Below are positions 27,821-50,189 of a stretch of 64,000 bases of DNA, one piece after another (position 1 is the first letter of the stretch; each line of letters starts with the position of its first letter). The stretch is taken from sequence record MT612988.1; one strand, written 5' to 3'. A program made the position numbers and the translations under genes. The notes under the pieces were generated by a model. It was not told the origin of the DNA. It searched no databases and saw only the letters and a program-made list of their open reading frames with translations.

Positions 27821-29038
27821 TTACCCTAGGCTCACTGTTGAACCGTCTAATGCCGCAGCTCCTGCGAGACTAAGCGTTGCGCCACCACCGTCATCACTAA
27901 TTGATGACGCCGAACGTGTATAAGACGAACTAACGCTTTCTGACATCGAGCCACCGACTGTTATTGTGTAATTACCGCTGATATTCTGCGTGTAATCGCC
28001 CGTGACGTTACTTTGAACATTCCCGCCCACAGTTTGATTAACATTCCCGTCAACGTTCTGTGTGACGTTCTGATGCACTGTCTGGCTAACATCTTTATCA
28101 ACTGTTTGAGTAACATTCATTTCAACATGCTGATCAACATTACCCTTAACATGCTGCTTCAAATCACCATCAACTTGCTGCGTGACATTTTGCTGGCAAT
28201 AGAACGTCGCGTCACCAACAACGGTTATATTCAAGTTCCCTTTGATAAAGACATTCTGATCTTTTTGAACAATCTCAAAATCATCACCAACAATCTTTGT
28301 AACTTTACTGCCGTCAGGATGAATTTCTTCAAATGTACCTGTTCGATGATACGTATGTAAACGCTCTGCACCCACAGTGTCATCAACCTCTCTGATGTGC
28401 CCAGATTCAGACTCGTGTACATGATTGAACGGGTACTGCGCTGCGTACGGCGTCTCTTTCTCGTTATAAACGGGACCGTTTTGATTATATCCCGCAATCG
28501 GAATGTCTTTCTCTTCGGCTGCGCGTTTACTAGCGATTATTTCATGTGGTCTATACACATAAGGCGCATCGCCACTATCAAAATCGCTCTGAGATTGATT
28601 TTCATCATACACATCGGGATCTACATCGTTTCGAGCTAAACGGTTTGTATCGGGCTCATTAAGTTTATCAGCTAACGGGTATTTTTCGTTTGGGTCATTA
28701 AACCCCTTACTGCCGTTAGCTAATTCTTCAGGTATACCAGGCAAAACACCCATCGCAATTGCATCTTGATGCAACTTATCTCTGAAAAAGCCGAATACCC
28801 ATGTACCTTCAACTACCCCTATTGGTGTATTACCAATCCCGTTCATCGCAGCGTTATCAAGCGACTGCATAGGGTGAACCCAAAGAAGTTCTTCAGTTCG
28901 AATACCTTGATTTGAACTTTTCTTCTCGGGGTGAAACCCAATCATTCTGACTTTAATTCTACCGAGTTTGAGTGGGTCGTTTGTTCTATCTTCAACAACA
29001 CCAGTCCACCAATCAAACCCATCTAATCCCATAAACAT
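27821..29038 (-). CDS. gp5: baseplate central spike (OB fold plus beta-helix, no lysozyme domain evident)
   Basis: WWTGVVEDR.DPLKLGRIKVR, YPFNHVHESESGH, 8-residue VxGNxxQx repeats. Confidence 0.93.
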   Translation of the reverse strand: MFMGLDGFDWWTGVVEDRTNDPLKLGRIKVRMIGFHPEKKSSNQGIRTEELLWVHPMQSLDNAAMNGIGNTPIGVVEGTWVFGFFRDKLHQDAIAMGVLPGIPEELANGSKGFNDPNEKYPLADKLNEPDTNRLARNDVDPDVYDENQSQSDFDSGDAPYVYRPHEIIASKRAAEEKDIPIAGYNQNGPVYNEKETPYAAQYPFNHVHESESGHIREVDDTVGAERLHTYHRTGTFEEIHPDGSKVTKIVGDDFEIVQKDQNVFIKGNLNITVVGDATFYCQQNVTQQVDGDLKQHVKGNVDQHVEMNVTQTVDKDVSQTVHQNVTQNVDGNVNQTVGGNVQSNVTGDYTQNISGNYTITVGGSMSESVSSSYTRSASSISDDGGGATLSLAGAAALDGSTVSLG

Positions 29039-30309
29039 TATTTCTTGCTCCCCGCAACTGCTACATTCATCGACGAATCACTTGATAATTCAAGCGTAGT
29101 AATGAATGAATTAGGCTCAACGCGATGCTTCAATTCATGAACAATCCATTTCCCTGACACATCAAGACTCGAATGGTTGTCACCAGTTACTGCGTGATAG
29201 TCAAGAAACACAACATCACCAACTGTAATGTTCGTATTACCTGGTATTTCTACAAGTATCTGTTTTGCATTCAAGTACGTTTCTTCCATTAATGAAACGC
29301 CATGAACAGACCCTAGAGGGTGTTTATTGTCATGCTCGTAAAAGCCATCGTTTGATATCAATTGAATGCTATTCAACGGTTGTTCTGTTACTGGAACTTC
29401 ACTAGGAAATTCTGATTCGCTCGTGTACATATGAGCTTTGTCATTTAAAATCCCAACCTTTTCAATATAATCACCACGACGAACATCTTTAGTCGTCAAC
29501 TTTTTGCGAATTAAACTATGAGAATATGTTCTAGAACCGAATAAACCACTAGAAATCTCATGCATATTAGACTGTTCTTTCACCACAACGCGCAATGCTG
29601 TGATTGTTTTACCGCGACCAGATGTCCATTTACCGTCACCTGTATCAGCACCTTTACGAATTATATAATCGTAATCTTTGTTTCTGATCGTACCAAGAGA
29701 CGTGAATTTAACCGAGTCCCGATCTTCGTAAAACATGAACTTACAACTGTTATTCACGTCAGTACTTGCATGGTCTACAAGACTGCTGATGATGTCGTAA
29801 GGTTTACCGATCTGCGTCACGTAATCACGTTGATAAAGAGAAGATTCAATTTCATACACGGGCTTCTCATCACCCAAATTGTCTAAAATCGTTTTGATTA
29901 TGTTCGATATACTAGTTTTCTTGAACACATACGGGCGTTTAACGTAATCATTCAATGTCAATAGATTATTAGTAAAACGAACAATTATAGTTTCGAAACC
30001 ACCAGTCGTTGACGGCATTCTTGATATGCCAGTAGCACGAAACGTTTTTCGATATACCTTATTTGCTTGCTCCCCGACATATGAAGCAAAATCAACATCG
30101 ATAGCTTCAAACCCCGTCATTCGAACAGTGTCTACGATTCCGACTGAATCTGTGAACATGAACATGCCCGAAACTAACCCGTCAAGCGACTCATAAATTT
30201 CCATGTGTGTGATTTCATTTTCAACAGCCGAGGCGAAATCAACACCACGAATGTGAATTTTGCTAACCACAAAGTTCTCAATTGGGTTAGCGGAGCGCAT
30301 TTCAAACAT
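29038..30309 (-). CDS. baseplate hub subunit (gp27-like)
   Basis: IYESLDG..SG...D..G N-terminus; IPGNTNITVGDVV, GKWIVHELKH C-terminus. Confidence 0.7.
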   Translation of the reverse strand: MFEMRSANPIENFVVSKIHIRGVDFASAVENEITHMEIYESLDGLVSGMFMFTDSVGIVDTVRMTGFEAIDVDFASYVGEQANKVYRKTFRATGISRMPSTTGGFETIIVRFTNNLLTLNDYVKRPYVFKKTSISNIIKTILDNLGDEKPVYEIESSLYQRDYVTQIGKPYDIISSLVDHASTDVNNSCKFMFYEDRDSVKFTSLGTIRNKDYDYIIRKGADTGDGKWTSGRGKTITALRVVVKEQSNMHEISSGLFGSRTYSHSLIRKKLTTKDVRRGDYIEKVGILNDKAHMYTSESEFPSEVPVTEQPLNSIQLISNDGFYEHDNKHPLGSVHGVSLMEETYLNAKQILVEIPGNTNITVGDVVFLDYHAVTGDNHSSLDVSGKWIVHELKHRVEPNSFITTLELSSDSSMNVAVAGSKK

Positions 30310-40783: not shown

Positions 40784-40861
40784 GGCCCTATAGCTCAACA
40801 CGGTTAGAGCAACCGACTCATAATCGGTAGGTTACAGGTTCGAGTCCTGTTGGGGTCACCA
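40784..40861 (+). tRNA. tRNA-CAT (Ile2/lysidine type most likely)
   Basis: Cloverleaf, loop CTCATAA, GGCCC acceptor, CCA. Confidence 0.9.
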
Positions 40862-40881
40862 AAATAAATTGAAAAAAGTTG

Positions 40882-40910
40882 TTGACAGACGTTTCATCAA
40901 CGTGTAGTAT
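40882..40910 (+). promoter_or_regulatory. early/sigma70 promoter
   Basis: TTGACA-17 nt-TAGTAT. Confidence 0.8.
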
Positions 40911-40940
40911 ACACATTATCAACTACACGAGGAAAACATT

Positions 40941-41171
40941 ATGTCACATAAATTGCTAGTTATCACATCAATGCACGGTTGCTACGTCGATTACGATTTC
41001 AGAACTGAAATGTTTGACAGATACATGTGTGATGTTGTGATTCCGAACGACTCTGTTGTTTTGTACTCGGGTACAGTTTCAATAGATGAAATTCAAGCAG
41101 TTGCGAACGAATGTTACGCTGACATCAAGATTGAAGAAGTCAGTGATGATGTTTTTGACAGCTATCTTTAA
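40941..41171 (+). CDS. hypothetical acidic protein
   Basis: GAGG RBS, downstream of a promoter. Confidence 0.75.
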   Translation: MSHKLLVITSMHGCYVDYDFRTEMFDRYMCDVVIPNDSVVLYSGTVSIDEIQAVANECYADIKIEEVSDDVFDSYL

Positions 41172-41175
41172 AAAT

Positions 41176-41415
41176 GCCGCTAACTGGCGTACAATACACA
41201 GTGTATTCCCAACATTAGTGCAGACGTAGGCTCGCAACCTACGTTGGTACCGAATCACTGGGACCGAGTAGAAAGTGCATGTGAGATGTCGAAGTCTTGT
41301 ATGTAGAAATAACGCTCGGCTGCTCTGAAATGCTGATTAGCTCTTACTTCGAAACTCTAATTGGGTGGAAGAGGTGTTGTGTTTGACGTGTGTTCGATTC
41401 ACACGAGCGGCGCCA
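41176..41415 (+). ncRNA. 240-nt RNA with tmRNA-like tRNA termini
   Basis: GCCGCT/AGCGGC acceptor + GCCA, T arm GTGTG-TTCGATT-CACAC preceded by GAC, stemless D loop, helix ACAATAC/GTGTTGT. Confidence 0.7.
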
Positions 41416-41428
41416 AGAGGAAATTATA

Positions 41429-41950
41429 ATGAAACCATTGAAGTTCGTTGAAGCGTTCTCTAAAGAAGAACGTGCTGCTATGACGATTGAAGAACGTAGC
41501 AGACTTCGTAAAATATATAACGAACGCTATCAAGAGTATGTTGATAAGTACATCAATGTATTCACTCGAAAAGACTTTCGAAGAGAGCGTTGCTGGGTTA
41601 TTCTTGCACGATGTAAAAAGACTGGTGAAATCATCGGTCGAATTGAAAATAGTTTTAGTATGGGATGGTCTAAAGAGCGTGTTCGTGTTATTCGACCGTA
41701 TCTAAACGGTAATTTCACGGGCGATGACCGCTTCTCTAAAGCTGAGTACAACAAAGCGTGTGCTGAGTACATAACTCATCATGAGAAACAAGTAAAGTCT
41801 CTCAGAGAAGCTTACAAAGACACTCACGACGTTTTCTTATCTCGTGTGGGTAGTAAGAACTGTCCTGTTTCTATTGATTGGGATACGTATTACAGTAAAA
41901 AAGACAAACGAAACTTTGAATATCGAAATTTGAAATTCAAAGTTAAATAA
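41429..41950 (+). CDS. hypothetical basic protein
   Basis: GAGG RBS before ATG 41429. Confidence 0.75.
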   Translation: MKPLKFVEAFSKEERAAMTIEERSRLRKIYNERYQEYVDKYINVFTRKDFRRERCWVILARCKKTGEIIGRIENSFSMGWSKERVRVIRPYLNGNFTGDDRFSKAEYNKACAEYITHHEKQVKSLREAYKDTHDVFLSRVGSKNCPVSIDWDTYYSKKDKRNFEYRNLKFKVK

Positions 41951-41955
41951 TTCAT

Positions 41956-42071
41956 AGTCGGGTAGCTCAGTGGTAGAGCACGAAGAATGATACTGACAAG
42001 TATCGCTCCAGCACTCCTTCAATTGCCTGTTAAGCACGTGGTCGCTGGTTCGAATCCAGCCCCGACTACCA
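41956..42071 (+). ncRNA. tRNA-Asn(GTT)-like RNA with a 41-nt insertion between positions 28 and 29
   Basis: AGTCGGG/CCCGACT+ACCA; CG|TGC-CTGTTAA-GCACG; insert 41983-42023 has GATAC-TGACAA-GTATC plus CAGCAC. Confidence 0.82.
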
Positions 42072-42097
42072 TTTTTGATAAACTAGTGAGGTATAAC

Positions 42098-42334
42098 ATG
42101 AGCGGAACATTTAATATCAACAAAACGTTACTGACTCCGAAACAATTGCGCAATCTAACAGATGAGCGTCTGAATGAATATCGCAAGTCGTTTCGTAAGC
42201 CTCTTGGGTTTTTGAAGCATCTGAACGATACAAACGAATTGACTTCAGATCAGCACAAGAAATTCGTTGAGCTTAATAAGCACTACAACGACGAAATTCT
42301 TGCTGAAATGAACAAGCGAAAACACTTAGGTTAA
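42098..42334 (+). CDS. hypothetical protein
   Basis: GAGGT RBS before ATG 42098. Confidence 0.7.
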   Translation: MSGTFNINKTLLTPKQLRNLTDERLNEYRKSFRKPLGFLKHLNDTNELTSDQHKKFVELNKHYNDEILAEMNKRKHLG

Positions 42335-42604
42335 TAAAATCGCAGAAAATTGAAAAAAATTATCAATTTTCTGCGAAAATACCGCAAATCGTCAGATTTA
42401 GTGTTATAAGTACTATAAAGAAACAAAACAAATTTTAATTTTTATTTCAAGAGAGCATTCAATGACGCATTCGTTTACACATTCATCTGAGACATTACGC
42501 AGCGATTTTTTGCGCTCAGAATTCGTGTATCTAGCGAATCCGATTGCGAACCAGAAGTGGGATACCCTCTTGTAGTCCGATAGTATAACATAGAAGTATA
42601 CTTG

Positions 42605-42628
42605 AGGACGCAAATAGCGTCCTTTTTT
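42605..42628 (+). terminator. intrinsic terminator
   Basis: AGGACGC/GCGTCCT followed by a T tract. Confidence 0.8.
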
Positions 42629-42705
42629 ATGGGCGTAAGAAAGTTAAGAAATTTTGTTTAACGTACTTTGATTACAGAGTATGATAAACAAAGTTAAAGA
42701 ACAAA

Positions 42706-42779
42706 CGGGACGTGGCGTAAAGGTAGCGTTCATGCTTTGGGAGCATGTGGTAAGAGTTCGAGTCTCTTCGTCCCGACCA
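42706..42779 (+). tRNA. tRNA-Pro(TGG)
   Basis: Cloverleaf, loop TTTGGGA, CCA. Confidence 0.93.
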
Positions 42780-42788
42780 ATTTAAAAT

Positions 42789-42865
42789 CCGTGACTAGCT
42801 CAATCTGGTAGAGTACTCCGTTTGGGGCGGAGAAGTTAAGCGTTCGAATCGCTTGTCACGGACCA
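42789..42865 (+). tRNA. tRNA-Pro(TGG), second copy
   Basis: Cloverleaf, loop TTTGGGG, CCA. Confidence 0.93.
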
Positions 42866-42872
42866 GTTTAAT

Positions 42873-42948
42873 GCCCGATTAGCTCAATTGGAAGAGCAGC
42901 GCCCTACGAAGGCGAAGGTTACAAGTTCGAATCTTGTATTGGGTGCCA
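42873..42948 (+). tRNA. tRNA-Arg(ACG)
   Basis: Cloverleaf, loop CTACGAA, CCA. Confidence 0.93.
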
Positions 42949-43150
42949 GTTAGTGTTGTTTGATTGAAGCTCGCTTTCGCACATTCCCGAAACTGCTTCT
43001 ACGAATTGATACGCTTAGGACCGTATCTCGTTAAGTACTGTCGAGATGATAGAATTTAACGAACTTTTCATAAATTAGTGTTTATGATGTCTTGAGCGAG
43101 TGTTAATATTAACACATAGAAAATGAAAACGTTAAGTTCTTCAAAATAAA

Positions 43151-43283
43151 TTCAAAAAGATGTTTACAACGATATAAACATCGTGTACAATGAAGAAAAG
43201 CGAAACATCATTCAAAATCGAATGAAAAGTTTTTCAAAAAAGATGTTTACAACGATAAAAACATCATGTACAATGAAGAAAAG
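43151..43283 (+). promoter_or_regulatory. duplicated early promoters (two ~50-bp direct repeats)
   Basis: TTTACA-17 nt-TACAAT at 43163-43191 and 43246-43274. Confidence 0.85.
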
Positions 43284-43301
43284 AAGTTTACAAAATTTAA
43301 T

Positions 43302-43378
43302 GCGCAAGTAGCCCAATTGGCAGAGGCACTGGTCTTAGAAACCAGAAGTTAAGAGTTCGAATCTCTTCTTGCGTACCA
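43302..43378 (+). tRNA. tRNA-Leu(TAG), short variable loop
   Basis: Cloverleaf, loop CTTAGAA. Confidence 0.9.
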
Positions 43379-43379
43379 A

Positions 43380-43454
43380 GCACCCTTAGCTTATCAGGAA
43401 AAGCGGCGGATTGAAGTCCCGCAGTGCTCGGTTCGATTCCGAGGGGGTGCACCA
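43380..43454 (+). tRNA. tRNA-Phe(GAA)
   Basis: Cloverleaf, loop TTGAAGT. Confidence 0.88.
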
Positions 43455-43543
43455 TATTATAGCTTGTTTGTAAGAGTTAAATCAAGCAAGGGGTTTTAGT
43501 TTTGGGTTATTTAGCAAACGCTCTTAACGTGAAAATCAAATCT

Positions 43544-43618
43544 GGGTCGTTCGTATAACGGTAGTACATCTGGCTTTTAACCAGAACGGTGAGAGTTCGA
43601 ATCTCTTGCGACCCACCA
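43544..43618 (+). tRNA. tRNA-Lys(TTT)
   Basis: Cloverleaf, loop CTTTTAA. Confidence 0.92.
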
Positions 43619-43629
43619 GATTTTATAAT

Positions 43630-43706
43630 GCGTCGGTAGCTCATCATGGAAGAGCAGGGAGCTTTTAACTCTCAGGTGTCTGGTTCGAGTCCAGGGCGGC
43701 GTACCA
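43630..43706 (+). tRNA. tRNA-Lys(TTT), second copy
   Basis: Cloverleaf, loop CTTTTAA. Confidence 0.9.
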
Positions 43707-43769
43707 AATTAGATACATTGTGTATCGCTTTGCAAGTTAGATAGCTTGCAAATCAATATACAATTTAAT

Positions 43770-43844
43770 TCTCCCGTGGACTAACGGTAGGTCATCACCC
43801 TTTCAAGGTGAAGTGCGCGAGTTCGAATCTCGTCGGGAGAACCA
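43770..43844 (+). tRNA. tRNA-Glu(TTC)
   Basis: Cloverleaf, loop CTTTCAA. Confidence 0.92.
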
Positions 43845-43850
43845 AATTAC

Positions 43851-43936
43851 GGAGCGTACGTCTCAAGGTGAGACAGGGGACTGTAAATCCCTGACCCTTA
43901 ACGGGTAGAGAGGTTCGATTCCTCTACGCTCCACCA
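43851..43936 (+). tRNA. tRNA-Tyr(GTA)
   Basis: Loop CTGTAAA, long variable arm. Confidence 0.92.
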
Positions 43937-43941
43937 GTTTT

Positions 43942-44028
43942 AGCTTGCATACTGCAATTTAACTTAATCTATTGATCGCTCGGCGAACTCAGTTCAGACA
44001 GCGATAAACAGACCAAAGAACGCAAGCT
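43942..44028 (+). ncRNA. free-standing helix-CTGCAA RNA
   Basis: AGCTTGC/GCAAGCT closing helix, ATA-CTGCAA, inner ATCGCT/AGCGAT hairpin. Confidence 0.65.
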
Positions 44029-44038
44029 GTTGAATAAT

Positions 44039-44115
44039 TGCGGGGTAGAGAAGTGGTCATCTCGTCGGTCTCATAAGCCGGAGAACGCTGGTTCGAATCC
44101 AGCCCCACGCAACCA
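44039..44115 (+). tRNA. tRNA-fMet(CAT)-like, bulged acceptor stem
   Basis: TGCGGGG/CCC(A)CGCA-ACCA, loop CTCATAA. Confidence 0.8.
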
Positions 44116-44161
44116 AATTTATTTCGACTAAATATTGTTTTACGCAATAAGGAAAATTACA

Positions 44162-44404
44162 ATGAAAACATTTGATGAATTCATTACCGAGTCGAAAGAT
44201 GTTACTTTCGGAGTTTCTGGCTCACTTTTTAGTGGTGCAATGGATAGAGAGAGACATCGAAACATGATGCAAAAACTTGGCGCTGTTAGAGACACCAAAT
44301 CAAAATCACAAGATAATGTTTGGGTTGTCAGTCAAGCGAATGCTGATGCAGTTGAAGAATATCTTAGTCAGTTTGATAAGCTGATGTGGGGTAGACACAA
44401 ATAA
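44162..44404 (+). CDS. candidate internal head protein (capsid-targeting sequence)
   Basis: MKTFDEFITE|S; late-promoter-like ACTAAATA at 44127. Confidence 0.75.
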   Translation: MKTFDEFITESKDVTFGVSGSLFSGAMDRERHRNMMQKLGAVRDTKSKSQDNVWVVSQANADAVEEYLSQFDKLMWGRHK

Positions 44405-44410
44405 TTAATT

Positions 44411-44509
44411 GGAAGGCTTAGCCGAGAGATTCTGGGTAGCGGCAACGGTCTTGAAAACCGTCGGTCACCGGGAGGTGATGTTAGGGTTCGAATCCCTAGT
44501 CTTCCGCCA
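44411..44509 (+). tRNA. tRNA-Ser(TGA), enlarged D loop
   Basis: Loop CTTGAAA, long variable arm. Confidence 0.88.
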
Positions 44510-44573
44510 ATTAGTTAACCGGTAAGTTTAGTCACTTAACCGATTAACACGAGCACTGAAATGTGCTCACTTT

Positions 44574-44647
44574 AGTCCCTTAGCTCAACGGTAGAGCGTG
44601 CGACCGATAATCGCTTGGTAAGAGTTCGATTCTCTTAGGGACTACCA
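44574..44647 (+). tRNA. tRNA-Ile(GAT)
   Basis: Loop CCGATAA. Confidence 0.9.
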
Positions 44648-44653
44648 AATTTT

Positions 44654-44727
44654 AGGGGCATGATGTAAAGGCAGCATGACGGATTCCAAACCCGTTCGTT
44701 AGAGTTCGAATCTCTATGCCCCTGCCA
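44654..44727 (+). tRNA. tRNA-Trp(CCA)
   Basis: Loop TTCCAAA, G73. Confidence 0.9.
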
Positions 44728-44732
44728 GTTTA

Positions 44733-44790
44733 AGTAATCTTACAGCAAACAATACAAAACTTTTATTTGGAAAAAGCAAAAAGGATTACT
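44733..44790 (+). ncRNA. free-standing helix-CAGCAA RNA
   Basis: AGTAATCT/GGATTACT helix, TA-CAGCAA, inner CTTTT-ATTTGGA-AAAAG anticodon-like hairpin. Confidence 0.65.
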
Positions 44791-44802
44791 GTTTAAATTC
44801 AA

Positions 44803-44877
44803 GGGTGTGTAACTCAGAGGCAGAGTAGCAAGCTGTTAACTTGCAAGTCGAGATTTCGAAATTCTCCACGCCCGCCA
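44803..44877 (+). tRNA. tRNA-Asn(GTT), atypical T stem
   Basis: Loop CTGTTAA. Confidence 0.85.
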
Positions 44878-44878
44878 C

Positions 44879-44954
44879 GCTTCATTAACTCAGTTGGTAG
44901 AGTGTCTGACTGTTAATCAGAGAGTCGTTGGTTCGAGTCCAACATGAAGCGCCA
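44879..44954 (+). tRNA. tRNA-Asn(GTT), second copy
   Basis: Loop CTGTTAA. Confidence 0.93.
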
Positions 44955-45023
44955 AATTCGGAGAGTCACTACCGTTAAGTGTGAACTTGAAAAAACAAAG
45001 CAACTAATTTAAGTTGTCTTTGG

Positions 45024-45099
45024 GGAGCCGAGGTGTAAAAGGTTGCATGTCTCCCTGTCACGGAGAAGGTAGCGGGTTCGAAACCCGTCGGTTCCGCCA
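45024..45099 (+). tRNA. tRNA-Asp(GTC)
   Basis: Loop CTGTCAC. Confidence 0.92.
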
Positions 45100-45118
45100 A
45101 AGATAATTTAAGAACAAT

Positions 45119-45192
45119 TGGGGATTGGTGTAAAGGCAGCATAACGTACTTTGAATGCGTTGGTATCAGTTCGAATCTGTTATCCCCAGCCA
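45119..45192 (+). tRNA. tRNA-Gln(TTG)
   Basis: Loop CTTTGAA, U1-A72. Confidence 0.92.
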
Positions 45193-45201
45193 AATACCAT
45201 A

Positions 45202-45315
45202 GAGTGTTTTCAGCAAACAATTTACTAATATTCTTCTGATGAAAAGAAAAGTTCGAGGTTCGATTCCTCTTCAGTGTCGGTATCACTGGTCTGGACGACG
45301 CTAGTAATAACACTC
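45202..45315 (+). ncRNA. circularly permuted tRNA mimic (YrlA-like topology) with CAGCAA
   Basis: GAGTGTT/AACACTC closing helix; order is CAGCAA, anticodon-like hairpin, T arm, loop-capped stem CAGTG/CACTG, D-like GTC-TGGAC-GAC. Confidence 0.75.
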
Positions 45316-45321
45316 AGTTAC

Positions 45322-45396
45322 GCTCCTGAAGCATTGATGGCGATGCAGCGGTCTTGTAAACCGCAGAATTCGGTTCGATTCCGAACGGGAGCACCA
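45322..45396 (+). tRNA. tRNA-Thr(TGT)
   Basis: Loop CTTGTAA. Confidence 0.92.
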
Positions 45397-45421
45397 TATT
45401 GATTAGAAAGTGTTATCATGA

Positions 45422-45429
45422 TATAAATA
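45422..45429 (+). promoter_or_regulatory. late promoter TATAAATA
   Basis: Exact consensus, 31 nt upstream of the 45460 ORF. Confidence 0.8.
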
Positions 45430-45459
45430 GTCATGTAACTACATTTTAGAGGTAATAAC

Positions 45460-45735
45460 ATGTCTATTAAAACATTTTCTGAATATCTTAACGAAGCAAA
45501 GCATCGTGGGTCTGGCGTAGACACTCATGACGGTAAGATTCCGTATGTATACGCTGACAGTAAAGACGCTGCTGCATTTGCTGATTTCGTATCGTCAATA
45601 GGTATGAAGCTTGATTCGAACGGTGAATTGAAGCTTTCTACACGAGATAAAGTACGAAAGTTCTTCTCAGAGCTTGATCAAGAAGCAACTAATTTCATGC
45701 TTCATGGCAACTTTGATATTATTGAATATATGTAA
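45460..45735 (+). CDS. candidate internal head protein (capsid-targeting sequence)
   Basis: MSIKTFSEYLNE|A; late promoter and GAGG RBS. Confidence 0.78.
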   Translation: MSIKTFSEYLNEAKHRGSGVDTHDGKIPYVYADSKDAAAFADFVSSIGMKLDSNGELKLSTRDKVRKFFSELDQEATNFMLHGNFDIIEYM

Positions 45736-45750
45736 AAATTGGTGATTGTA

Positions 45751-45960
45751 ATGGTATATATTTCTGTATGGTGTGAATATGACATTGGTGGGGATTTCGG
45801 TGGCAACAATAACGAAGATGTTTTTTCCGTTAGTGAAGAATTATCTAATGAAGAAGTTGAAGCAAAAGTTGCTGAATATATTTCTGACATTGTTGGTGAG
45901 CCGATTGAAGAACTTGAAGGTTTATACGGTTGGGAATATATTTCAATCACACAGTTGTAA
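45751..45960 (+). CDS. hypothetical acidic protein
   Basis: GGTG RBS before ATG 45751. Confidence 0.65.
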   Translation: MVYISVWCEYDIGGDFGGNNNEDVFSVSEELSNEEVEAKVAEYISDIVGEPIEELEGLYGWEYISITQL

Positions 45961-45967
45961 AAAATAT

Positions 45968-46042
45968 GGGCCGTTAGCTTAATTGGGAAAGCGCCTCACT
46001 TGCAATGAGGAAGATAGGGTTCGACTCCCTGCGTGTCCACCA
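45968..46042 (+). tRNA. tRNA-Ala(TGC), irregular acceptor stem
   Basis: Loop CTTGCAA, G3-U70. Confidence 0.82.
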
Positions 46043-46116
46043 AATTTCGAACACATGAGCGTAGACTCTCTTTACTACCATCGTCTACACTAGTTCATGG
46101 TTCGAATCTTTTCAAT

Positions 46117-46192
46117 GCGCTGTTAGCTCAATTGGAAGAGCACGTCCCTTCTAAGGATGGGGTTATGAGTTCGAATCTCATACGGCGTGCCA
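46117..46192 (+). tRNA. tRNA-Arg(TCT)
   Basis: Loop CTTCTAA. Confidence 0.93.
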
Positions 46193-46204
46193 TATTAAGC
46201 TCTT

Positions 46205-46715
46205 ATCATGCGACGAATGATACTTTGCTTCGGCATATCACGAGCATGGTGAGAGAGACAATATACAGCAAACAATTGAAATTACTTAAAAGAAGTGATG
46301 ATCTTAACCTGGGCTGATTTTAACCTGAGCTTGCTTAGGCGCAGCTTGAAAGGAAAGATTCTCTCTGTCTAGAAATAGTCAGATAGGCGCGTCGCTGAAA
46401 CAGACGATATTTGCTTGTTGAGAATCAATAAGCTAGTCAACTCCGATTTATGCAAAAGACGAAAAAACACTTCGGTATTGTCTGTACTTAATTCGTCGGA
46501 AACGACACTGTAGCCGAAAGGCAAGATACGCTAACTTAGATGTTAGCAGCGATATAGGATGTATCGCGTGGCATTATTATGAACGTTTCTAGTCATCGTC
46601 ATGTAAAACAATCAAAACTAAGCAGAGGTAACAGTACCCACTATGTGGTTCCTCACTCAGACCATGAATATATGGTGTCAGCCAGTGTGCGATTAAATGA
46701 GTTAATTACTGCAAT
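46205..46715 (+). ncRNA. ~500-nt highly structured non-coding region containing a helix-CAGCAA module (46252-46366)
   Basis: Many stable hairpins (C-UUCG-G and GAAA tetraloops); no RBS-led ORF. Confidence 0.6.
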
Positions 46716-46716
46716 T

Positions 46717-46792
46717 GGTGATGTAGCTCAAGTGGCAGAGCAACGCTTTCATACGGCGTAAGATCCGATTTCGAGTATCGGTGTCACCTCCA
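46717..46792 (+). tRNA. tRNA-Met(CAT), atypical (U73, T stem lacks G53-C61)
   Basis: Cloverleaf, loop TTCATAC. Confidence 0.75.
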
Positions 46793-46812
46793 AATTCAAA
46801 AACAAAGAGGTT

Positions 46813-46977
46813 ACGAAGCATGACTACTTTACACTAAGCAAGGGCAACATACGCGATAAAATTCGATATGTTGAAAAATGTCTCGCGAATGAGACCAACC
46901 CGTTCTTTATAAGAACACTTACTGTAGAGCTTACGAATCTACGTGCAATACGTGATTTGTTCGACGCTTCAGATTAA
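46813..46977 (+). pseudogene. 54-codon open frame beginning ACG after a GAGG RBS
   Basis: KHDYFTLSKGNIRDKIRYVEKCL...; no ATG in frame. Confidence 0.4.
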
Positions 46978-46981
46978 CAAT

Positions 46982-47055
46982 GCGGGTATGATGTAATGGT
47001 AGCATGACGTCCTTCCAAGTCGTTCGTCTCGGTTCGAGTCCGTGTACCCGCTCCA
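46982..47055 (+). tRNA. tRNA-Gly(TCC)
   Basis: Loop CTTCCAA, U73. Confidence 0.9.
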
Positions 47056-47061
47056 AATTTT

Positions 47062-47135
47062 GGTCCCTTAGTATAATGGCAGTACGTCTCTTTTACACAG
47101 AGAAAGAAGTGGCTCGATTCCACTAGGGACTACCA
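47062..47135 (+). tRNA. tRNA-Val(TAC)
   Basis: Loop TTTACAC. Confidence 0.88.
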
Positions 47136-47158
47136 TTCTTTATGATGAGAAATAAATT

Positions 47159-47398
47159 ATGACGCCTGCATTACTTGAAACTCATGAATACGTAAACCAC
47201 AACCAAATCGAAAAGCTACAGCAAATGGACAGACTTATGTTTGATTGTTGGCGTGCTGGGTATAAACGTGGCAAGATTTTAGAGCTTGCATTGTCGATTG
47301 AGTCTTCAACAACCGAAGCAGACATCGAAATTTATTTCAAAAATATGTTTACAAGAGAACTATCGGCTGATAGTATCTACTTAAAGAAAACTGTATGA
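47159..47398 (+). CDS. hypothetical protein
   Basis: 79-aa ORF between tRNAs, GAG RBS. Confidence 0.65.
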   Translation: MTPALLETHEYVNHNQIEKLQQMDRLMFDCWRAGYKRGKILELALSIESSTTEADIEIYFKNMFTRELSADSIYLKKTV

Positions 47399-47550
47399 CG
47401 GAGTAGTGCTCCGACCGAATGACACACGCAAATGAGTCCGGTTGACAAACGTTATATGTCCCAAAGTATTGCAGGTAGCGACGGCGGTGTTGCTAGTAGA
47501 TTTATCTATTTCTCCAAGACATAATGCAAGCTTTTAAAGTGTACTTTGGT

Positions 47551-47627
47551 GTGGCAGTGGGTGAAGTGGAAATACCCCCGGGTTGTGATTCCGGAAGATG
47601 CGGGTTCGATCCCCGTCTGTCACCCCA
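47551..47627 (+). tRNA. tRNA-His(GTG)
   Basis: Loop TTGTGAT, C73. Confidence 0.9.
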
Positions 47628-47639
47628 AAGTACATTTAT

Positions 47640-47713
47640 GCTCGAATCGTATAATGGAAGTATGACGGATTGCAAATCCGCAGGTCAGGGTTCGATTCCC
47701 TGTTCGAGCTCCA
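47640..47713 (+). tRNA. tRNA-Cys(GCA)
   Basis: Loop TTGCAAA, U73. Confidence 0.9.
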
Positions 47714-47715
47714 AT

Positions 47716-47792
47716 GCGCACGTGGTCCAATTGGCAGAGGCATGAGGCTTAAAATCTCAGGGATGGCGGTTCGAATCCGCCCGTGCGTACCA
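47716..47792 (+). tRNA. tRNA-Leu(TAA), short variable loop
   Basis: Loop CTTAAAA. Confidence 0.9.
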
Positions 47793-47908
47793 AATTCTAG
47801 CATAAGCCGCGTTCTATACGAAGCTAGACTACCGCCGTTGAAAAACGGTCTCAGCCGAGCGAAAGCTGACAGGTGTTAGGGATTAAAGAGTCGCGGCAGT
47901 TTATTCAA

Positions 47909-47985
47909 GCCCAACTAGTCCAATTGGCAGAGGCACTAGTTTCAAACACTAGGAGTTCCGAGTTCGAATCTCGGGTTGGGCACCA
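47909..47985 (+). tRNA. tRNA-Leu(CAA), short variable loop
   Basis: Loop TTCAAAC. Confidence 0.9.
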
Positions 47986-48153
47986 AATTCACTTAGCAAC
48001 GCGAATCGAAAGAGAGTGGATAGACCTGCTAAGAGTCCCGCTAGGTCTTTAAATTATCTAAAGTGGATCTGCGAAGCGCGTGGCACACGTCAGCAATAAG
48101 AGCAAATATGTGTCTGAGCATGAGAGCAGCATGCCATTAATTGATGAGACGTT

Positions 48154-48242
48154 GGAAGCATGGTCTAAAGGTATGACAGCACCCTGCTAAGGTGTCGGAC
48201 GTTAATAGCGTTCTCTGGGTTCGATTCCCAGTGCTTCCGCCA
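48154..48242 (+). tRNA. tRNA-Ser(GCT)
   Basis: Loop CTGCTAA, long variable arm. Confidence 0.92.
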
Positions 48243-48247
48243 AATTC

Positions 48248-48507
48248 GCAATAAGACATTGTACAGCAATCATTACAAAATCAAAGCAAACTTTAATAGT
48301 AATGAGGCGCACTAGCTGCTTTCTCAGTGATGACGTGAGCCTGTCGCATTCTCATGGTAGGAAATGACCATTAAGACGGTGTTCGTACTGTCAAACGAAA
48401 TAGGACTCATGCCGAATCATGAGTATTTTTCCGATGAGAAACATCGTTATAGTCAATTGAGATTTAAGGAAAGACGATAAAACATTTCTCGAATGTCTGT
48501 GTATTGC
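48248..48507 (+). ncRNA. ~260-nt helix-CAGCAA RNA at the end of the tRNA operon
   Basis: GCAATA-AGACATT/AATGTCT-TATTGC closing helices, GTA-CAGCAA, multiple internal hairpins, terminator immediately after. Confidence 0.7.
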
Positions 48508-48514
48508 ACATTAG

Positions 48515-48538
48515 AACCTGCCTTGAGCAGGTTTTTTT
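48515..48538 (+). terminator. intrinsic terminator ending the tRNA operon
   Basis: AACCTGC/GCAGGTT followed by a T tract. Confidence 0.85.
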
Positions 48539-48628
48539 GTTTATGGCGTTTGATAATTGATATAGTCTAAAGAAACAGTTAGATATGATTCTAAATACAG
48601 ATGAACTCAAATCAATTGGAGAAATGTC

Positions 48629-48835
48629 ATGAGTGATAAAACATTCGATAAGTTCATGTTAGAACTAGAAGAACAAAAGCCAGAAGATAAAAAGAAAAAG
48701 AAACGTTCAGTAAAAGATCGTGTCAAGTCTGGTGCAAAGAAAGCTGGTAAAGCTGCGAAAACTGGTGCTAAAGTAGCCGCTGGTGCTGCTGCGGTAGGTC
48801 TTGCAACTCAAGTAACAAAGAAATCTAACGAATAA
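48629..48835 (+). CDS. Lys/Ala-rich candidate internal head protein
   Basis: MSDKTFDKFMLELEE; TCTAAATA at 48590; highly basic body. Confidence 0.65.
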   Translation: MSDKTFDKFMLELEEQKPEDKKKKKRSVKDRVKSGAKKAGKAAKTGAKVAAGAAAVGLATQVTKKSNE

Positions 48836-49062
48836 TGAAGAACATTCATCAAAAGTCTCATGCTCGTGAAGGGCGTGGTTCTGGTAATGGGCACAATGAA
48901 AATTGGCGCAATGCACCTCTTTGGAAGAACATTGGTCCCAATGCTGAAAAGATTAAAAAGGAAGCAGAAGCCGCAGAGAAAGACGAAGAGATTGATAAAC
49001 CCAATCTCGATGAGTTATCGCAGCGTGAGCGTATGCGCCGTTTACAAAGCATAGCGCATTAA
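48835..49062 (+). CDS. hypothetical protein
   Basis: TAATG-coupled to the upstream ORF. Confidence 0.65.
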   Translation: MKNIHQKSHAREGRGSGNGHNENWRNAPLWKNIGPNAEKIKKEAEAAEKDEEIDKPNLDELSQRERMRRLQSIAH

Positions 49063-49086
49063 TCTGAATTGGCGTAACTTCTCAGT

Positions 49087-49131
49087 GGGAGATATGTGGT
49101 CAAGGCAATAGGTTCGATTCCTGTGTCTCCC
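49087..49131 (+). ncRNA. 45-nt minimal tRNA-like element (acceptor, D-like loop, T arm; no anticodon arm)
   Basis: GGGAGAT/GTCTCCC, ATAGG-TTCGATT-CCTGT. Confidence 0.5.
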
Positions 49132-49160
49132 GTATTCTATTAACTAAGAGGTGAGCAATC

Positions 49161-49373
49161 ATGGAAATACTTTCTGAAGAAACACTAAAAAGCATGGAAT
49201 TGTCTGAAGTTTGCAAAGTACGCAAAACGCTTAATAAATTTATTGCACGTCTGCGCAAAGATTTTCGAGACTTTCAATGTAACCGAGTTGATGAGAAATA
49301 TTATAAAGAACATCTTATGTACTCCACGATTGTAGATCGAATGATCGAAAAAAAGTTACGCCATTCACACTAA
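49161..49373 (+). CDS. hypothetical protein
   Basis: GAGGTG RBS. Confidence 0.75.
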   Translation: MEILSEETLKSMELSEVCKVRKTLNKFIARLRKDFRDFQCNRVDEKYYKEHLMYSTIVDRMIEKKLRHSH

Positions 49374-49374
49374 C

Positions 49375-49400
49375 AAAAAAGCCCCAATTAAGGGGCTTTT
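49375..49400. terminator. bidirectional terminator
   Basis: A6-GCCCC/GGGGC-T4 between convergent ORFs. Confidence 0.8.
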
Positions 49401-49404
49401 ATTT

Positions 49405-49776
49405 TTATAGCTTATGTTGAATCATTAGCTCATGTAAACCTTCAACTGCAAAATCATTCAGCCTATCTAGCTCGACATCTAACTTGTCCATTGCCATTCT
49501 TAGTTCATCACTAATACCTTTCTTATAGCGTAGCTTATTGATCAGCCTCTTCGCGTCTAACACGTTCATCTTGATGTGTTCGTAATTATATCGCACTGCT
49601 TCATATCGATATTTGTTTTGCTTGGCTTTCTGTTCGATATGCAACAATTTAGTGTGCATCTTGGCTAGTTTCTTAATGCTGCGCGAGTCAGCCCCTGCTT
49701 TGTATCTAGACCATTGTCTTTCAAACCAACCTTCGTTTAGGTACTCTTCAAAAGATTTTATTTTTTCGTCATTCAT
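49405..49776 (-). CDS. candidate internal head protein (capsid-targeting sequence)
   Basis: MNDEKIKSFEEYLNE|G; GATAAATA late-like promoter at 49810-49817 on the - strand. Confidence 0.75.
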   Translation of the reverse strand: MNDEKIKSFEEYLNEGWFERQWSRYKAGADSRSIKKLAKMHTKLLHIEQKAKQNKYRYEAVRYNYEHIKMNVLDAKRLINKLRYKKGISDELRMAMDKLDVELDRLNDFAVEGLHELMIQHKL

Positions 49777-49841
49777 GTGTTGACTTCCTGTTGTTAAACC
49801 TGTATCATGTATTTATCGGAAATAACTAACGAGAATTTACT

Positions 49842-50189
49842 ATGTTTGTAATGATTGATGATATGCGTGATATCGATAAGTTCACTGCGCCTGAAATTTC
49901 CGCAGATCAGAAGCTTGTTTTGCGTACGTATGAAGACGGTATGAAATTCGTCAAACATACGAATCTTACAGATATTACTTTATTCATGGACAATGATCTA
50001 GGCGGTGCTCTTGGTCATGAGGGATATGATATTCTCTCTCATGCAATTGATCATCGTAACTTCCCACGCACAGTTGTTCTAGTAACGAGTAACCCTGTTG
50101 CTCACTCTAAGATGACTATGATGTTGATGGGTACACTTCAATATAAACGTGTGGGTTCTATCTTTATGAGGCAAGATACATGCACTTAA
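49842..50189 (+). CDS. cyclic-phosphate-processing receiver-domain protein
   Basis: IDDMR...FMDNDLG...GYDIL...TSNPV matches the LDDxR/LDHDLG/GYD/SxNPxG signature. Confidence 0.75.
   Translation: MFVMIDDMRDIDKFTAPEISADQKLVLRTYEDGMKFVKHTNLTDITLFMDNDLGGALGHEGYDILSHAIDHRNFPRTVVLVTSNPVAHSKMTMMLMGTLQYKRVGSIFMRQDTCT

What the first reader, a model, noticed from the sequence alone, without database searches (positions are those of the whole stretch)
44127..49817. Four dispersed late-promoter genes with T4-type capsid-targeting sequences: candidate injected anti-defence proteins
Seen: N-termini MKTFDEFITE (44162), MSIKTFSEYLNE (45460), MSDKTFDKFMLELEE (48629) and MNDEKIKSFEEYLNE (49405, - strand). 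Each has its own (T/A/C/G)-TAAATA late-like promoter inside an otherwise early region. Known: T4 IPII/IPIII start MKTYQEFIAE, gp21 cleaves after (I/L)xE, and IPI* near the T4 tRNA cluster blocks GmrSD. The mature parts are mutually unrelated. Inference: these are four uncharacterised internal proteins co-injected with the DNA.
Basis: partly seen in the sequence, partly recalled or inferred. Interest (0 to 1): 0.7.

Follow-up and report, generated by a model that had tools for sequence, protein, structure and literature searches.

The report
Packaged internal proteins of a vibriophage
Four small genes scattered through the tRNA cluster of a T4-like Vibrio phage start with the short address tag that phage T4 uses to load proteins into its head, and relatives of three of them have been detected in phage particles, so they are very probably head-packaged proteins; what they do in the host is unknown.

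Summary
The window is Vibrio phage vB_ValM_R10Z, a KVP40-like Schizotequatrovirus. A pattern built only from these four N-termini hits nothing else in the 64 kb. In the T4 genome it picks out ipII, ipIII and gene 61.1 among 3,468 ORF candidates. Each tag ends in (L/I)-x-Glu. The phage has a gp21-type protease 49% identical to T4's, and its gp23 keeps the maturation site as LNE|A.

Independent evidence comes from the published particle proteome of the related phage 6E35.1a. It contains the orthologues of A (6 and 10 counts), C (14 and 15) and D (3 and 0, weak), plus a fourth tagged protein from the same locus. Only 1 of 19 untagged neighbours was seen. B has no orthologue there.

The mature parts are unrelated to each other and to anything known. 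The best reading is T4-type internal proteins addressed to the prohead core. Cleavage, injection and an anti-defence role are inferred, not shown. C and D are conserved core genes. C is a Lys/Ala-rich basic peptide, so it may instead be DNA-associated. This is a new member of a known kind.

The parts
40784..48242 (+). Cluster of 28 tRNA genes in which genes A, B and C are embedded (context)
   Evidence: ARAGORN. The same arrangement is seen in KVP40, V07, phi-Grn1 and 6E35.1a.
44127..44134 (+). Late-promoter-like octamer ACTAAATA, ending 27 nt before the start codon of A
   Evidence: The C at -12 is the variant reported for Aeh1 late promoters. The same variant precedes a tail-fibre gene in this genome.
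44162..44404 (+). Gene A (R10Z_242), 80 aa. Predicted propeptide is residues 1-10, ending ITE. Predicted mature part is 70 aa, pI 9.2.
   Evidence: Weak PHROG hit to 'internal head protein' (E=0.0022). The 6E35.1a orthologue is 67% identical in the mature part and was detected in particles at 6 and 10 counts.
45422..45429 (+). Perfect late-promoter octamer TATAAATA, ending 30 nt before the start codon of B
   Evidence: Conserved in phi-Grn1.
45460..45735 (+). Gene B (R10Z_243), 91 aa. Predicted propeptide is residues 1-12, ending LNE. Predicted mature part is 79 aa, pI 5.5.
   Evidence: Among the eight sampled loci it is found only in R10Z and phi-Grn1. No proteomic data.
48513..48535 (+). Terminator-like hairpin just upstream of the promoter motif of C
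   Evidence: 9 pairs plus a T run.
48590..48597 (+). Late-promoter-like octamer TCTAAATA, ending 31 nt before the start codon of C
   Evidence: A TAAATA-type octamer (TCTAAATA or ACTAAATA) is kept at 28-31 nt in all eight related loci.
48629..48835 (+). Gene C (R10Z_246; KVP40.0308), 68 aa. Predicted propeptide is residues 1-15, ending LEE. Predicted mature part is a 53-aa Lys/Ala-rich peptide, pI 10.6.
   Evidence: PHROG 24717. The 6E35.1a orthologue has the same PHROG and was detected at 14 and 15 counts.
49377..49400 (.). Bidirectional terminator-like hairpin directly after the stop codon of D
   Evidence: scored on both strands.
49405..49776 (-). Gene D (R10Z_249; KVP40.0305), 123 aa. Predicted propeptide is residues 1-15, ending LNE. 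Predicted mature part is 108 aa, pI 9.8, modelled as three long helices.
   Evidence: PHROG 14513. The 6E35.1a orthologue has the same PHROG and was detected at 3 and 0 counts. The motif positions are invariant at about 34% overall identity.
49810..49817 (-). Late-promoter-like octamer GATAAATA, ending 33 nt before the start codon of D
   Evidence: Kept at 30-33 nt in the relatives; PVA23 has GCTAAATA instead.

Best explanation
A, B, C and D are internal head proteins of the T4 type.

Proposed mechanism:
1. Each gene is transcribed late from its own gp55-type promoter.
2. Each protein is made with a 10-15 residue N-terminal capsid-targeting sequence. This tag binds the gp22-based scaffolding core, so the protein is built into the prohead.
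3. The gp21-type prohead protease then cuts after the Glu of the (L/I)-x-Glu that ends the tag.
4. The mature peptides (about 8.0, 8.8, 5.4 and 13.0 kDa) stay in the head with the DNA and are expected to leave with it at infection.

Shown: the tag, the protease site, the promoter motifs, the protease and its conserved gp23 site, and the presence of orthologues of A, C and (weakly) D in particles of a related phage.

Inferred: binding to the core, the cleavage itself, ejection into the host, and any function there.

On function I would split the set.
- A and B are patchily distributed, as are the extra tagged genes seen in relatives at this locus. This is the pattern expected of host-specific first-response counter-defence cargo, as for T4 IPI and IPIII.
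- C is a conserved, very basic Lys/Ala-rich peptide. It more probably has a general role such as binding or neutralising the packaged DNA.
- D is a conserved basic helical protein whose role is open.

The confidence of 0.75 is for 'tag-addressed head proteins' taken over the four: higher for A and C, lower for B and D. For the anti-defence role alone I would give about 0.3.
For: Tag:
- It is specific to these ORFs in the window and rare in the whole genome.
- The same pattern retrieves T4 ipII and ipIII.
- It fits the published CTS definition.
- The motif positions stay invariant in D-family members only about 34% identical overall, and in the A and C orthologues.

Protease:
- The gp21 homologue is 49% identical to T4's over its full length.
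- T4 gp23's LTE|A aligns with LNE|A here, and B and D end in LNE.

Promoters:
- The same octamer variants lie 15-56 nt upstream of gp22, gp23, gp24, sheath, tube, fibres and Alt.
- They occur before only these four of the 16 CDS in the locus.
- Strict-tag genes versus the TAAATA motif gives Fisher p = 9e-4.
- The literature agrees on these variants.

Particles:
- In 6E35.1a all 4 tagged ORFs of the tRNA locus were detected, against 1 of 19 untagged neighbours (Fisher p = 5.6e-4).
- Tagged proteins elsewhere in the genome were also detected: the R10Z_106 orthologue at 31 and 79 counts, and the PARP-like R10Z_267 orthologue at 18 and 4.

Other points:
- T4 IP genes also flank the T4 tRNA cluster.
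- Precedent for function: IPI blocks GmrSD, and IPIII is needed to infect ECOR17.
- The N-terminal residues are of low confidence in both models (residues 1-13 in D; 1-4 and 9-11 in A), as expected of a flexible propeptide.
Against: - No data come from R10Z itself. The proteome is from a relative about 34-67% identical in these proteins.
- Those particles were only PEG-precipitated. Clearly non-structural proteins also appear at 1-10 counts (SSB, dUTPase, thymidylate synthase, ligase), so D's 3 and 0 is not above background.
- B has no orthologue in that phage.
- Only protein-level counts are published, so cleavage after the Glu is unproven.
- The loosely tagged R10Z_107 orthologue was not detected, so loose matches are unreliable.
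- T4 IP genes do not each have a late promoter within 100 nt, so that detail differs from the model system.
- For the anti-defence part: there are no hits to anti-defence models, no homologues outside the genus, and no structural neighbours. C and D are core genes under strong purifying selection, with dN/dS of 1.6e-5 and 0.009 in Table S8.
Confidence: 0.75

Rival explanations
1. The proteins are addressed to the prohead, but they are assembly or DNA-packing components and not injected counter-defence effectors. In this reading C would be a polycationic DNA-neutralising peptide. D would be a helical core or scaffold accessory. Both could be partly degraded or simply retained.
For: C and D occur in every Schizotequatrovirus locus examined. 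They belong to the 18-of-18 core set with very low dN/dS. Mature C has 17 Lys+Arg in 53 residues, pI 10.6. In T4, lysines of internal proteins contact DNA phosphates. D is modelled as three long helices.
Against: A and B, and the extra tagged genes p0246 in 6E35.1a and phiGrn1_0052, are patchy and unrelated to one another. That pattern suits accessory cargo better than assembly parts. T4's basic IPIII also has a host-specific role, so being basic does not exclude a function inside the cell.
Confidence: 0.3
2. The late-type promoters are there mainly to keep the downstream tRNA genes transcribed late in infection. The small ORFs would be incidental leader ORFs, and their N-terminal likeness to the CTS would have no packaging role.
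For: A, B and C lie on the tRNA strand, with tRNA genes downstream (A is followed 20 nt later by tRNA-Ser). No terminator-like site was scored directly after A or B.
Against: D is on the opposite strand with its own terminator and no tRNA downstream. The ORFs and their tags are conserved as proteins across diverged phages. The products were detected in particles. A peptide pattern that also retrieves the T4 IPs cannot be incidental.
Confidence: 0.04
3. The mass-spectrometry signals come from abundant late cytoplasmic proteins carried along with PEG-precipitated particles. The shared N-terminus would serve another purpose, such as efficient translation initiation or binding a common cytoplasmic partner.
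For: The particle preparation was not gradient-purified, and it contains non-structural enzymes at low counts. All four 5' ends share A-rich codons right after the start.
Against: Detection tracks the tag and not the neighbourhood: 4 of 4 tagged against 1 of 19 untagged. At DNA level only the codons of the motif and the promoter octamer are shared. The tag ends in the protease site that this phage's own gp23 uses. The homologous tag in T4 is experimentally sufficient for packaging.
Confidence: 0.1

Closest known systems
T4 internal proteins IPII and IPIII (ipII, ipIII)
   Same: The N-terminal ten residues are of the same type. T4 has MKTYQEFIAE and A has MKTFDEFITE, with aromatic residues at 4 and 7, an aliphatic residue at 8 and Glu at 10. 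The proteins are small and mostly basic. The genes lie within a few kb of the tRNA cluster. The same pattern retrieves both sets.
   Different: The mature parts are not similar. B, C and D carry 2-5 extra residues before the motif. Each R10Z gene has its own late-type octamer about 30 nt upstream. T4 ipIII and ipII have none within 100 nt, and the nearest perfect octamers lie upstream of gene e.
T4 IPI / IPI* (inhibitor of the GmrSD type IV restriction enzyme)
   Same: Small size and charge: mature A is 70 aa with pI 9.2, and IPI* is 76 aa with pI 9.0. Both share the first residues of the tag. IPI also sits next to the tRNA genes. It is the paradigm of an injected anti-restriction protein.
   Different: No sequence similarity. 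No PDB sequence or fold match for A or D. The IPI propeptide is 19 residues long. No evidence for a GmrSD-type target in Vibrio was sought or found.
T4 Alt (packaged ADP-ribosyltransferase) and the polymorphic internal-protein loci of T-even phages
   Same: Alt shows that unrelated cargo domains can be sent into the head and trimmed by gp21. This genome has an Alt homologue with a late motif whose orthologue is abundant in particles. It also has a second, PARP-like tagged protein. The patchy presence of A, B and other tagged genes mirrors the variable IP sets of T-evens.
   Different: Here the variable tagged genes sit between tRNA genes. All belong to families with no members outside KVP40-like phages.
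Ejection proteins of giant phages (phiKZ, 201phi2-1, SPN3US)
   Same: Head-internal proteins whose propeptides are removed by a gp21-related protease cutting after Glu.
   Different: Those proteins are large, lack the T4-type N-terminal tag and form an inner body. There is no sequence relation.

Membership tests
T4-type internal proteins (CTS-addressed prohead cargo) | N-terminal propeptide of 10-19 residues resembling the IPIII capsid-targeting sequence, with key residues at positions 4 and 7 (targeting) and 8 and 10 (processing) | tested here: met
   Definition. The N-termini of A-D and the real T4 IPs fall under one pattern that hits nothing else in the window and only ipII, ipIII and 61.1 in T4.
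T4-type internal proteins (CTS-addressed prohead cargo) | Propeptide ends in a prohead-protease site (cut after Glu in L/I-x-Glu) | tested here: met
   The tags end in ITE, LNE, LEE and LNE. In the C orthologues the aliphatic residue is kept while the middle residue varies; the 6E35.1a orthologue reads LDEE at this point, so the cut position there is ambiguous. Only the sequence was tested, not cleavage.
T4-type internal proteins (CTS-addressed prohead cargo) | The phage encodes the gp21-type protease and a gp22 scaffolding core that receive and process such cargo | tested here: met
   gp21 is 49% and gp23 60% identical to T4's. The gp23 maturation site aligns as LNE|A (the position of the T4 site is from my own knowledge). 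gp22, gp67-like and gp68-like genes are annotated.
T4-type internal proteins (CTS-addressed prohead cargo) | Synthesis at the time of head assembly (late transcription) | tested here: inconclusive
   Late-type octamers lie 27-33 nt upstream, the same variants as before structural genes. No transcript data exist in the searched literature.
T4-type internal proteins (CTS-addressed prohead cargo) | Presence in mature virions: A and C | tested here: met
   Orthologues in 6E35.1a particles: 6 and 10 counts for A, 14 and 15 for C. The evidence is from a relative and from PEG-precipitated particles only.
T4-type internal proteins (CTS-addressed prohead cargo) | Presence in mature virions: D | tested here: inconclusive
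   The orthologue gave 3 and 0 counts, within the range of evident contaminants.
T4-type internal proteins (CTS-addressed prohead cargo) | Presence in mature virions: B | not testable with these tools
   No orthologue in 6E35.1a. Among the sampled loci B occurs only in R10Z and phi-Grn1.
T4-type internal proteins (CTS-addressed prohead cargo) | Removal of the propeptide in the virion, and ejection into the host with the DNA | not testable with these tools
   Only protein-level spectral counts are published. There are no peptide-level or infection data.
IPI*-type inhibitors of type IV restriction (GmrSD) | Sequence or fold of mature IPI* | tested here: not met
   No BLASTP alignment of A to IPI. 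No significant PDB fold or sequence match for A or D. The A model is of modest confidence (pLDDT 68).
Catalogued anti-defence protein families | Match to an anti-defence profile | tested here: not met
   The Antidefense_HMM_hit column of Table S8 is empty for the C and D orthologues; the passages shown for the A orthologue and p0246 also list no hit. That was the authors' DefenseFinder run, not mine. Pfam and PHROGs give no function.

The most novel reading that the evidence does not exclude
KVP40-like phages may carry a large modular arsenal of tag-addressed cargo, with at least seven proteins per genome. It would include a second, PARP-like ADP-ribosyltransferase and a ParB-C-terminal-like domain. 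The tRNA cluster would serve as the exchange site where new cargo cassettes (late promoter, tag, novel domain) are swapped between phages. These injected cassettes, and not only receptor-binding proteins, would then help explain the unusually broad host range of this genus by disarming first-response defences of different Vibrio species.
Probability: 0.25. Interest if true: 0.7.

Novelty: new member of a known kind. Interest (0 to 1): 0.5.

Why it matters
Injected internal proteins are the first phage products to meet the host. So far only T4 IPI has a defined target, and IPIII a host-specific phenotype. Four families in the window can now be named as probable head cargo, along with at least three more elsewhere in the genome. 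All are annotated 'hypothetical' in every record, and several were already seen, without interpretation, in a published particle proteome. That gives concrete candidates for new counter-defence or host-takeover functions in marine Vibrio phages, which are used in aquaculture biocontrol. It also shows that the T4 targeting tag and its protease site are conserved across the deep split between T-even and schizo-T-even phages. A simple N-terminal scan can therefore annotate such cargo in other Straboviridae.

Tried and rejected
Searches that gave nothing:
- Homology. Word-indexed searches of 5.8 billion proteins with A, B and D found only KVP40-type phage proteins. A full HMMER profile search of 1.84 billion representatives with the D family found four representatives, all of the same family.
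- Domain libraries. Pfam gave no hit for A-D. PHROGs gave only family-of-unknown-function hits, plus one weak 'internal head protein' hit for A that is driven by the N-terminus.
- PDB sequence searches gave nothing better than E = 0.09.
- Structure. The D model (pLDDT 73, three helices) and the A model (pLDDT 68, small alpha/beta) have no Foldseek match at E <= 0.001 in PDB. In BFVD, A matches only its own identical entry. Hits to T4-type 'internal head protein' entries there have E > 0.5 and mean nothing.

Ideas tested and rejected:
- Recent DNA duplication of a 5' cassette. The four upstream regions align only at the octamer and the motif codons.
- Direct homology of A to T4 IPI or IPII beyond the tag.
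- R10Z_107 as a tagged protein. It fits only a loose pattern, and its orthologue was not detected in particles.

Literature that could not be checked:
- The KVP40 genome paper (PMC180978) and the T4 genome review (PMC150520) are not held. I cannot exclude that CTS-like ORFs of KVP40 were already remarked on there.
- Full-text searches for KVP40 with 'capsid targeting sequence' or 'internal protein' found no such statement.
- No transcriptome of a KVP40-like phage was found.

Slips and disclosures:
All T4 letters in this report come from NC_000866.4 as read.
- I also recalled two T4 accession strings and used them only as search terms inside a paper. I fetched the record only after the paper displayed NC_000866.4.
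- For scanning, I joined tiles of the public R10Z and T4 records end to end, unchanged, in scratch files.

Full report
**Identity of the window.** Window 44000-50000 is 100% identical to Vibrio phage vB_ValM_R10Z (MT612988.1, record 168000-174000). This is a 247-kb KVP40-like member of Schizotequatrovirus, Straboviridae. The flagged stretch lies inside a cluster of 28 tRNA genes (40784-48242, + strand). Downstream are small ORFs and then the long-tail-fibre genes. All four flagged ORFs are annotated 'hypothetical protein' here and in KVP40.

The four ORFs and their N-termini are exactly as quoted.
- A: 44162-44404 (+), 80 aa.
- B: 45460-45735 (+), 91 aa.
- C: 48629-48835 (+), 68 aa.
- D: 49405-49776 (-), 123 aa.

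I wrote a pattern for what the four share: Lys, Thr/Ser, an aromatic residue, two residues on, another aromatic, an aliphatic residue, any residue, then Glu, all within the first 16 residues.
- It hits these four and nothing else among 1,387 start-to-stop candidates on both strands of the window. Shuffling residues 2-31 of every candidate gives 0.003 hits on average.
- Because the pattern came from the data, the real test is an independent genome. I fetched T4 (NC_000866.4, accession shown). There the same pattern hits three of 3,468 candidates: ipII, ipIII and the 54-codon gene 61.1. ipI shares the first seven residues.
- The tag therefore matches the T4 capsid-targeting sequence. A review defines that sequence as a 10-19 residue propeptide in which residues 4 and 7 matter for targeting and 8 and 10 for processing.
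- A has exactly that spacing. B, C and D carry two to five extra residues in front.

**Protease site and protease.** Each tag ends in (L/I)-x-Glu: ITE, LNE, LEE and LNE.
- R10Z encodes a gp21 homologue 49% identical to T4's over its whole length, and a gp23 that is 60% identical.
- The T4 gp23 maturation site reads LTE|A (its position is from my own knowledge). It aligns with LNE|A in R10Z gp23. This is the same tripeptide that ends the tags of B and D.
- Cleavage of A-D is inferred, not shown.

**Promoters.** I made a crude gene call of the whole R10Z record, with its tiles joined as they stand. It gives 411 genes, of which 50 have TAAATA within 100 nt upstream.
- Those 50 include gp22, gp23, gp24, tail sheath, tail tube, baseplate and fibre genes, inh and Alt. 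The motif ends 15-56 nt before the start codon in these.
- The variants include TATAAATA, TCTAAATA, ACTAAATA, GATAAATA and CATAAATA.
- A-D carry ACTAAATA, TATAAATA, TCTAAATA and GATAAATA at 27, 30, 31 and 33 nt.
- Among the 16 annotated CDS of the locus (R10Z_239-254), only these four have the motif.
- Published work agrees. The T at -13 is poorly conserved in T4 relatives including KVP40, and the schizo-T-even Aeh1 uses C at -12.
- C's motif follows a terminator-like hairpin at 48513-48535. D is a self-contained minus-strand unit ending in a bidirectional hairpin at 49377-49400.
- At DNA level the four 5' regions share only the octamer and the codons of the motif. This is convergence or ancient modularity, not recent duplication.
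The tRNA block is on the strand opposite to the replication genes, several sigma-70-like sites are scored on it, and I found no transcriptome.

**Relatives.** In seven other Schizotequatrovirus loci, C and D are always present with a TAAATA-type octamer at the same distance (KVP40, V07, VS2, VH7D, phi-Grn1, PVA23, QD01).
- Besides R10Z, A occurs only in PVA23 among these, and B only in phi-Grn1.
- phi-Grn1 has a further tagged gene at the edge of the tRNA cluster (phiGrn1_0052), with an unrelated mature part and CATAAATA 28 nt upstream.
- In the D family the motif positions remain invariant in members only about 34% identical overall.
- Whole-genome scanning of R10Z adds tagged genes outside the window:
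  - R10Z_90, which matches a PHROG called 'ParB C-terminal domain';
  - R10Z_106;
  - the long-start form of R10Z_267, with a weak Pfam PARP hit and CATAAATA 20 nt upstream.

**Independent evidence for packaging.** An ISME J 2025 paper analysed PEG-precipitated particles of the Schizotequatrovirus 6E351A (GenBank MW824377) by tandem mass spectrometry. Its Tables S4 and S8 are held.
- I matched PHROG numbers and GenBank tags and read the locus. All four proteins below carry a late-type octamer 25-30 nt upstream:

| 6E35.1a protein | Relation to the window | Tag | Counts (two replicates) |
|---|---|---|---|
| VP6E351A_0394 (p0245) | Orthologue of A, 67% identical in the mature part | MKTLQEFLAE | 6 and 10 |
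| VP6E351A_0391 (p0246) | Tagged protein with a new mature part | MKTLAEFLGE | 12 and 13 |
| VP6E351A_0380 (p0252) | Orthologue of C (PHROG 24717) | as in C | 14 and 15 |
| VP6E351A_0377 (p0255) | Orthologue of D (PHROG 14513) | as in D | 3 and 0 |

- Of the 19 other CDS between p0239 and p0261, only p0251 was seen (5 and 0). Tagged against detected gives Fisher p = 5.6e-4.
- Elsewhere in that genome the orthologue of R10Z_106 gave 31 and 79 counts. The orthologue of the PARP-like R10Z_267 gave 18 and 4. Both have tag-like N-termini.
- The loosely matching R10Z_107 orthologue was not detected.
- Caveats. The particles were not gradient-purified. SSB, dUTPase, thymidylate synthase and ligase appear at 1-10 counts, so D's signal is not above background. 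No peptide-level data show the cut. B has no orthologue there.
- The paper lists these proteins as hypothetical and does not discuss them as internal proteins.

**What the mature parts are.** They are unrelated to one another and to the T4 IPs.
- They have no homologues outside KVP40-type phages in 5.8 billion proteins, or in a full profile search of 1.84 billion representatives.
- They have no Pfam domain, no PDB sequence match and no significant structural neighbour.
- Predicted mature forms:
  - A: 70 aa, pI 9.2, close to T4 IPI* in size and charge.
  - B: 79 aa, pI 5.5.
  - C: 53 aa, pI 10.6, with 17 Lys+Arg.
  - D: 108 aa, pI 9.8, modelled as three long helices.
- The N-terminal residues are of low confidence in both models (residues 1-13 in D; 1-4 and 9-11 in A).

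**Mechanism and function.** The best-supported account has five steps: late synthesis, tag-mediated incorporation into the gp22 core, trimming by the gp21-type protease, retention with the DNA, and release into the cell at infection. The first three rest on sequence plus strong analogy. Retention rests on a relative's proteome. Release is pure analogy with T4.
- For function, T4 offers two precedents of host-specific counter-defence: IPI against GmrSD, and IPIII, which is needed on ECOR17.
- The patchy genes fit that pattern. These are A, B, p0246 and phiGrn1_0052.
- C and D do not fit it. They are present in all 18 phages of the ISME set, with dN/dS of 1.6e-5 and 0.009. C looks like a DNA-neutralising polycation, in line with the lysine-phosphate contacts described for T4 internal proteins.
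- No anti-defence profile is listed for these proteins in the Table S8 passages I could read.

**Comparison and novelty.** These are members of the known functional class of CTS-addressed internal proteins. They are not members of any known sequence family.
- Differences from T4: extra residues before the tag in three of the four; an individual late-type promoter for each gene, whereas the T4 IP genes have none within 100 nt; and placement between tRNA genes.
- I found no description of such proteins in KVP40-like phages in the searchable literature. The KVP40 genome paper itself was not available.
It is a new member of a known kind and of moderate interest. The functional claim remains open.

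Noticed in passing
L006:4333-5442 (-) = R10Z record 192232-193341 (R10Z_267, read from the upstream ATG): A 369-aa protein with a tag-like N-terminus (MKNLKSFMEELQLVTE), a weak Pfam PARP catalytic-domain hit (E=1e-4) and CATAAATA 20 nt upstream. Its 6E35.1a orthologue was detected in particles (18 and 4 counts). It may be a second packaged ADP-ribosyltransferase besides Alt. The annotated start in R10Z cuts off the tag.
   Followed up: partly
L004:11139-11786 (-) = R10Z_106: A 215-aa protein starting MKKFGEFLTE, of unknown function and just downstream of gp24, gp55 and R10Z_107. Its 6E35.1a orthologue is abundant in particles (31 and 79 counts).
   Followed up: partly
L004:1061-1498 (-) = R10Z_90: A 145-aa protein starting MKTYTEFLSE. 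The rest matches the C-terminal third of PHROG 2579 ('ParB C-terminal domain', E=1e-49). 6E35.1a has no counterpart at this position. It looks like another variable tagged cargo gene.
   Followed up: partly
L008:18966-19130 (-) = T4 gene 61.1: This 54-codon T4 ORF of unknown function starts MKTFKEFIKE. It is the only T4 hit of the strict pattern besides ipII and ipIII. I could not check whether it is already regarded as an internal protein.
   Followed up: no
L015:43-339 (+) = phiGrn1_0052; L019:7632-7856 (+) = 6E35.1a p0246: Two further tagged genes with novel mature parts sit in the tRNA locus of relatives, each with a late-type octamer 28-29 nt upstream. p0246 was detected in particles (12 and 13 counts). 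The locus behaves like a cassette site.
   Followed up: partly
L015:7035-9098 (-) and L014:6367-8430 (-): phi-Grn1 and VH7D carry a two-gene minus-strand insertion (571 aa and 112 aa) between the last tRNA-Ser and gene C. R10Z, KVP40, V07 and 6E35.1a lack it.
   Followed up: no
L005:9139-10671 (-) = R10Z record 109139-110671: A 510-codon ORF with TATAAATA 43 nt upstream has no CDS in the R10Z record, and locus tag _181 is skipped there.
   Followed up: no
window 45751-45960 (+) and 47159-47398 (+) (R10Z_244, R10Z_245): Small untagged ORFs between the tRNA genes are conserved as proteins in 6E35.1a (p0247, p0249). They have no late-type motif and were not detected in particles. They serve as useful internal negative controls, and their function is unknown.
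   Followed up: partly
window 29038-30120 (-): This is the only other window ORF that fits a looser form of the N-terminal pattern (MTGFEAIDVDFASYVGE). The motif starts 11 residues in, and the ORF lies in the structural-gene block. It is probably chance.
   Followed up: no
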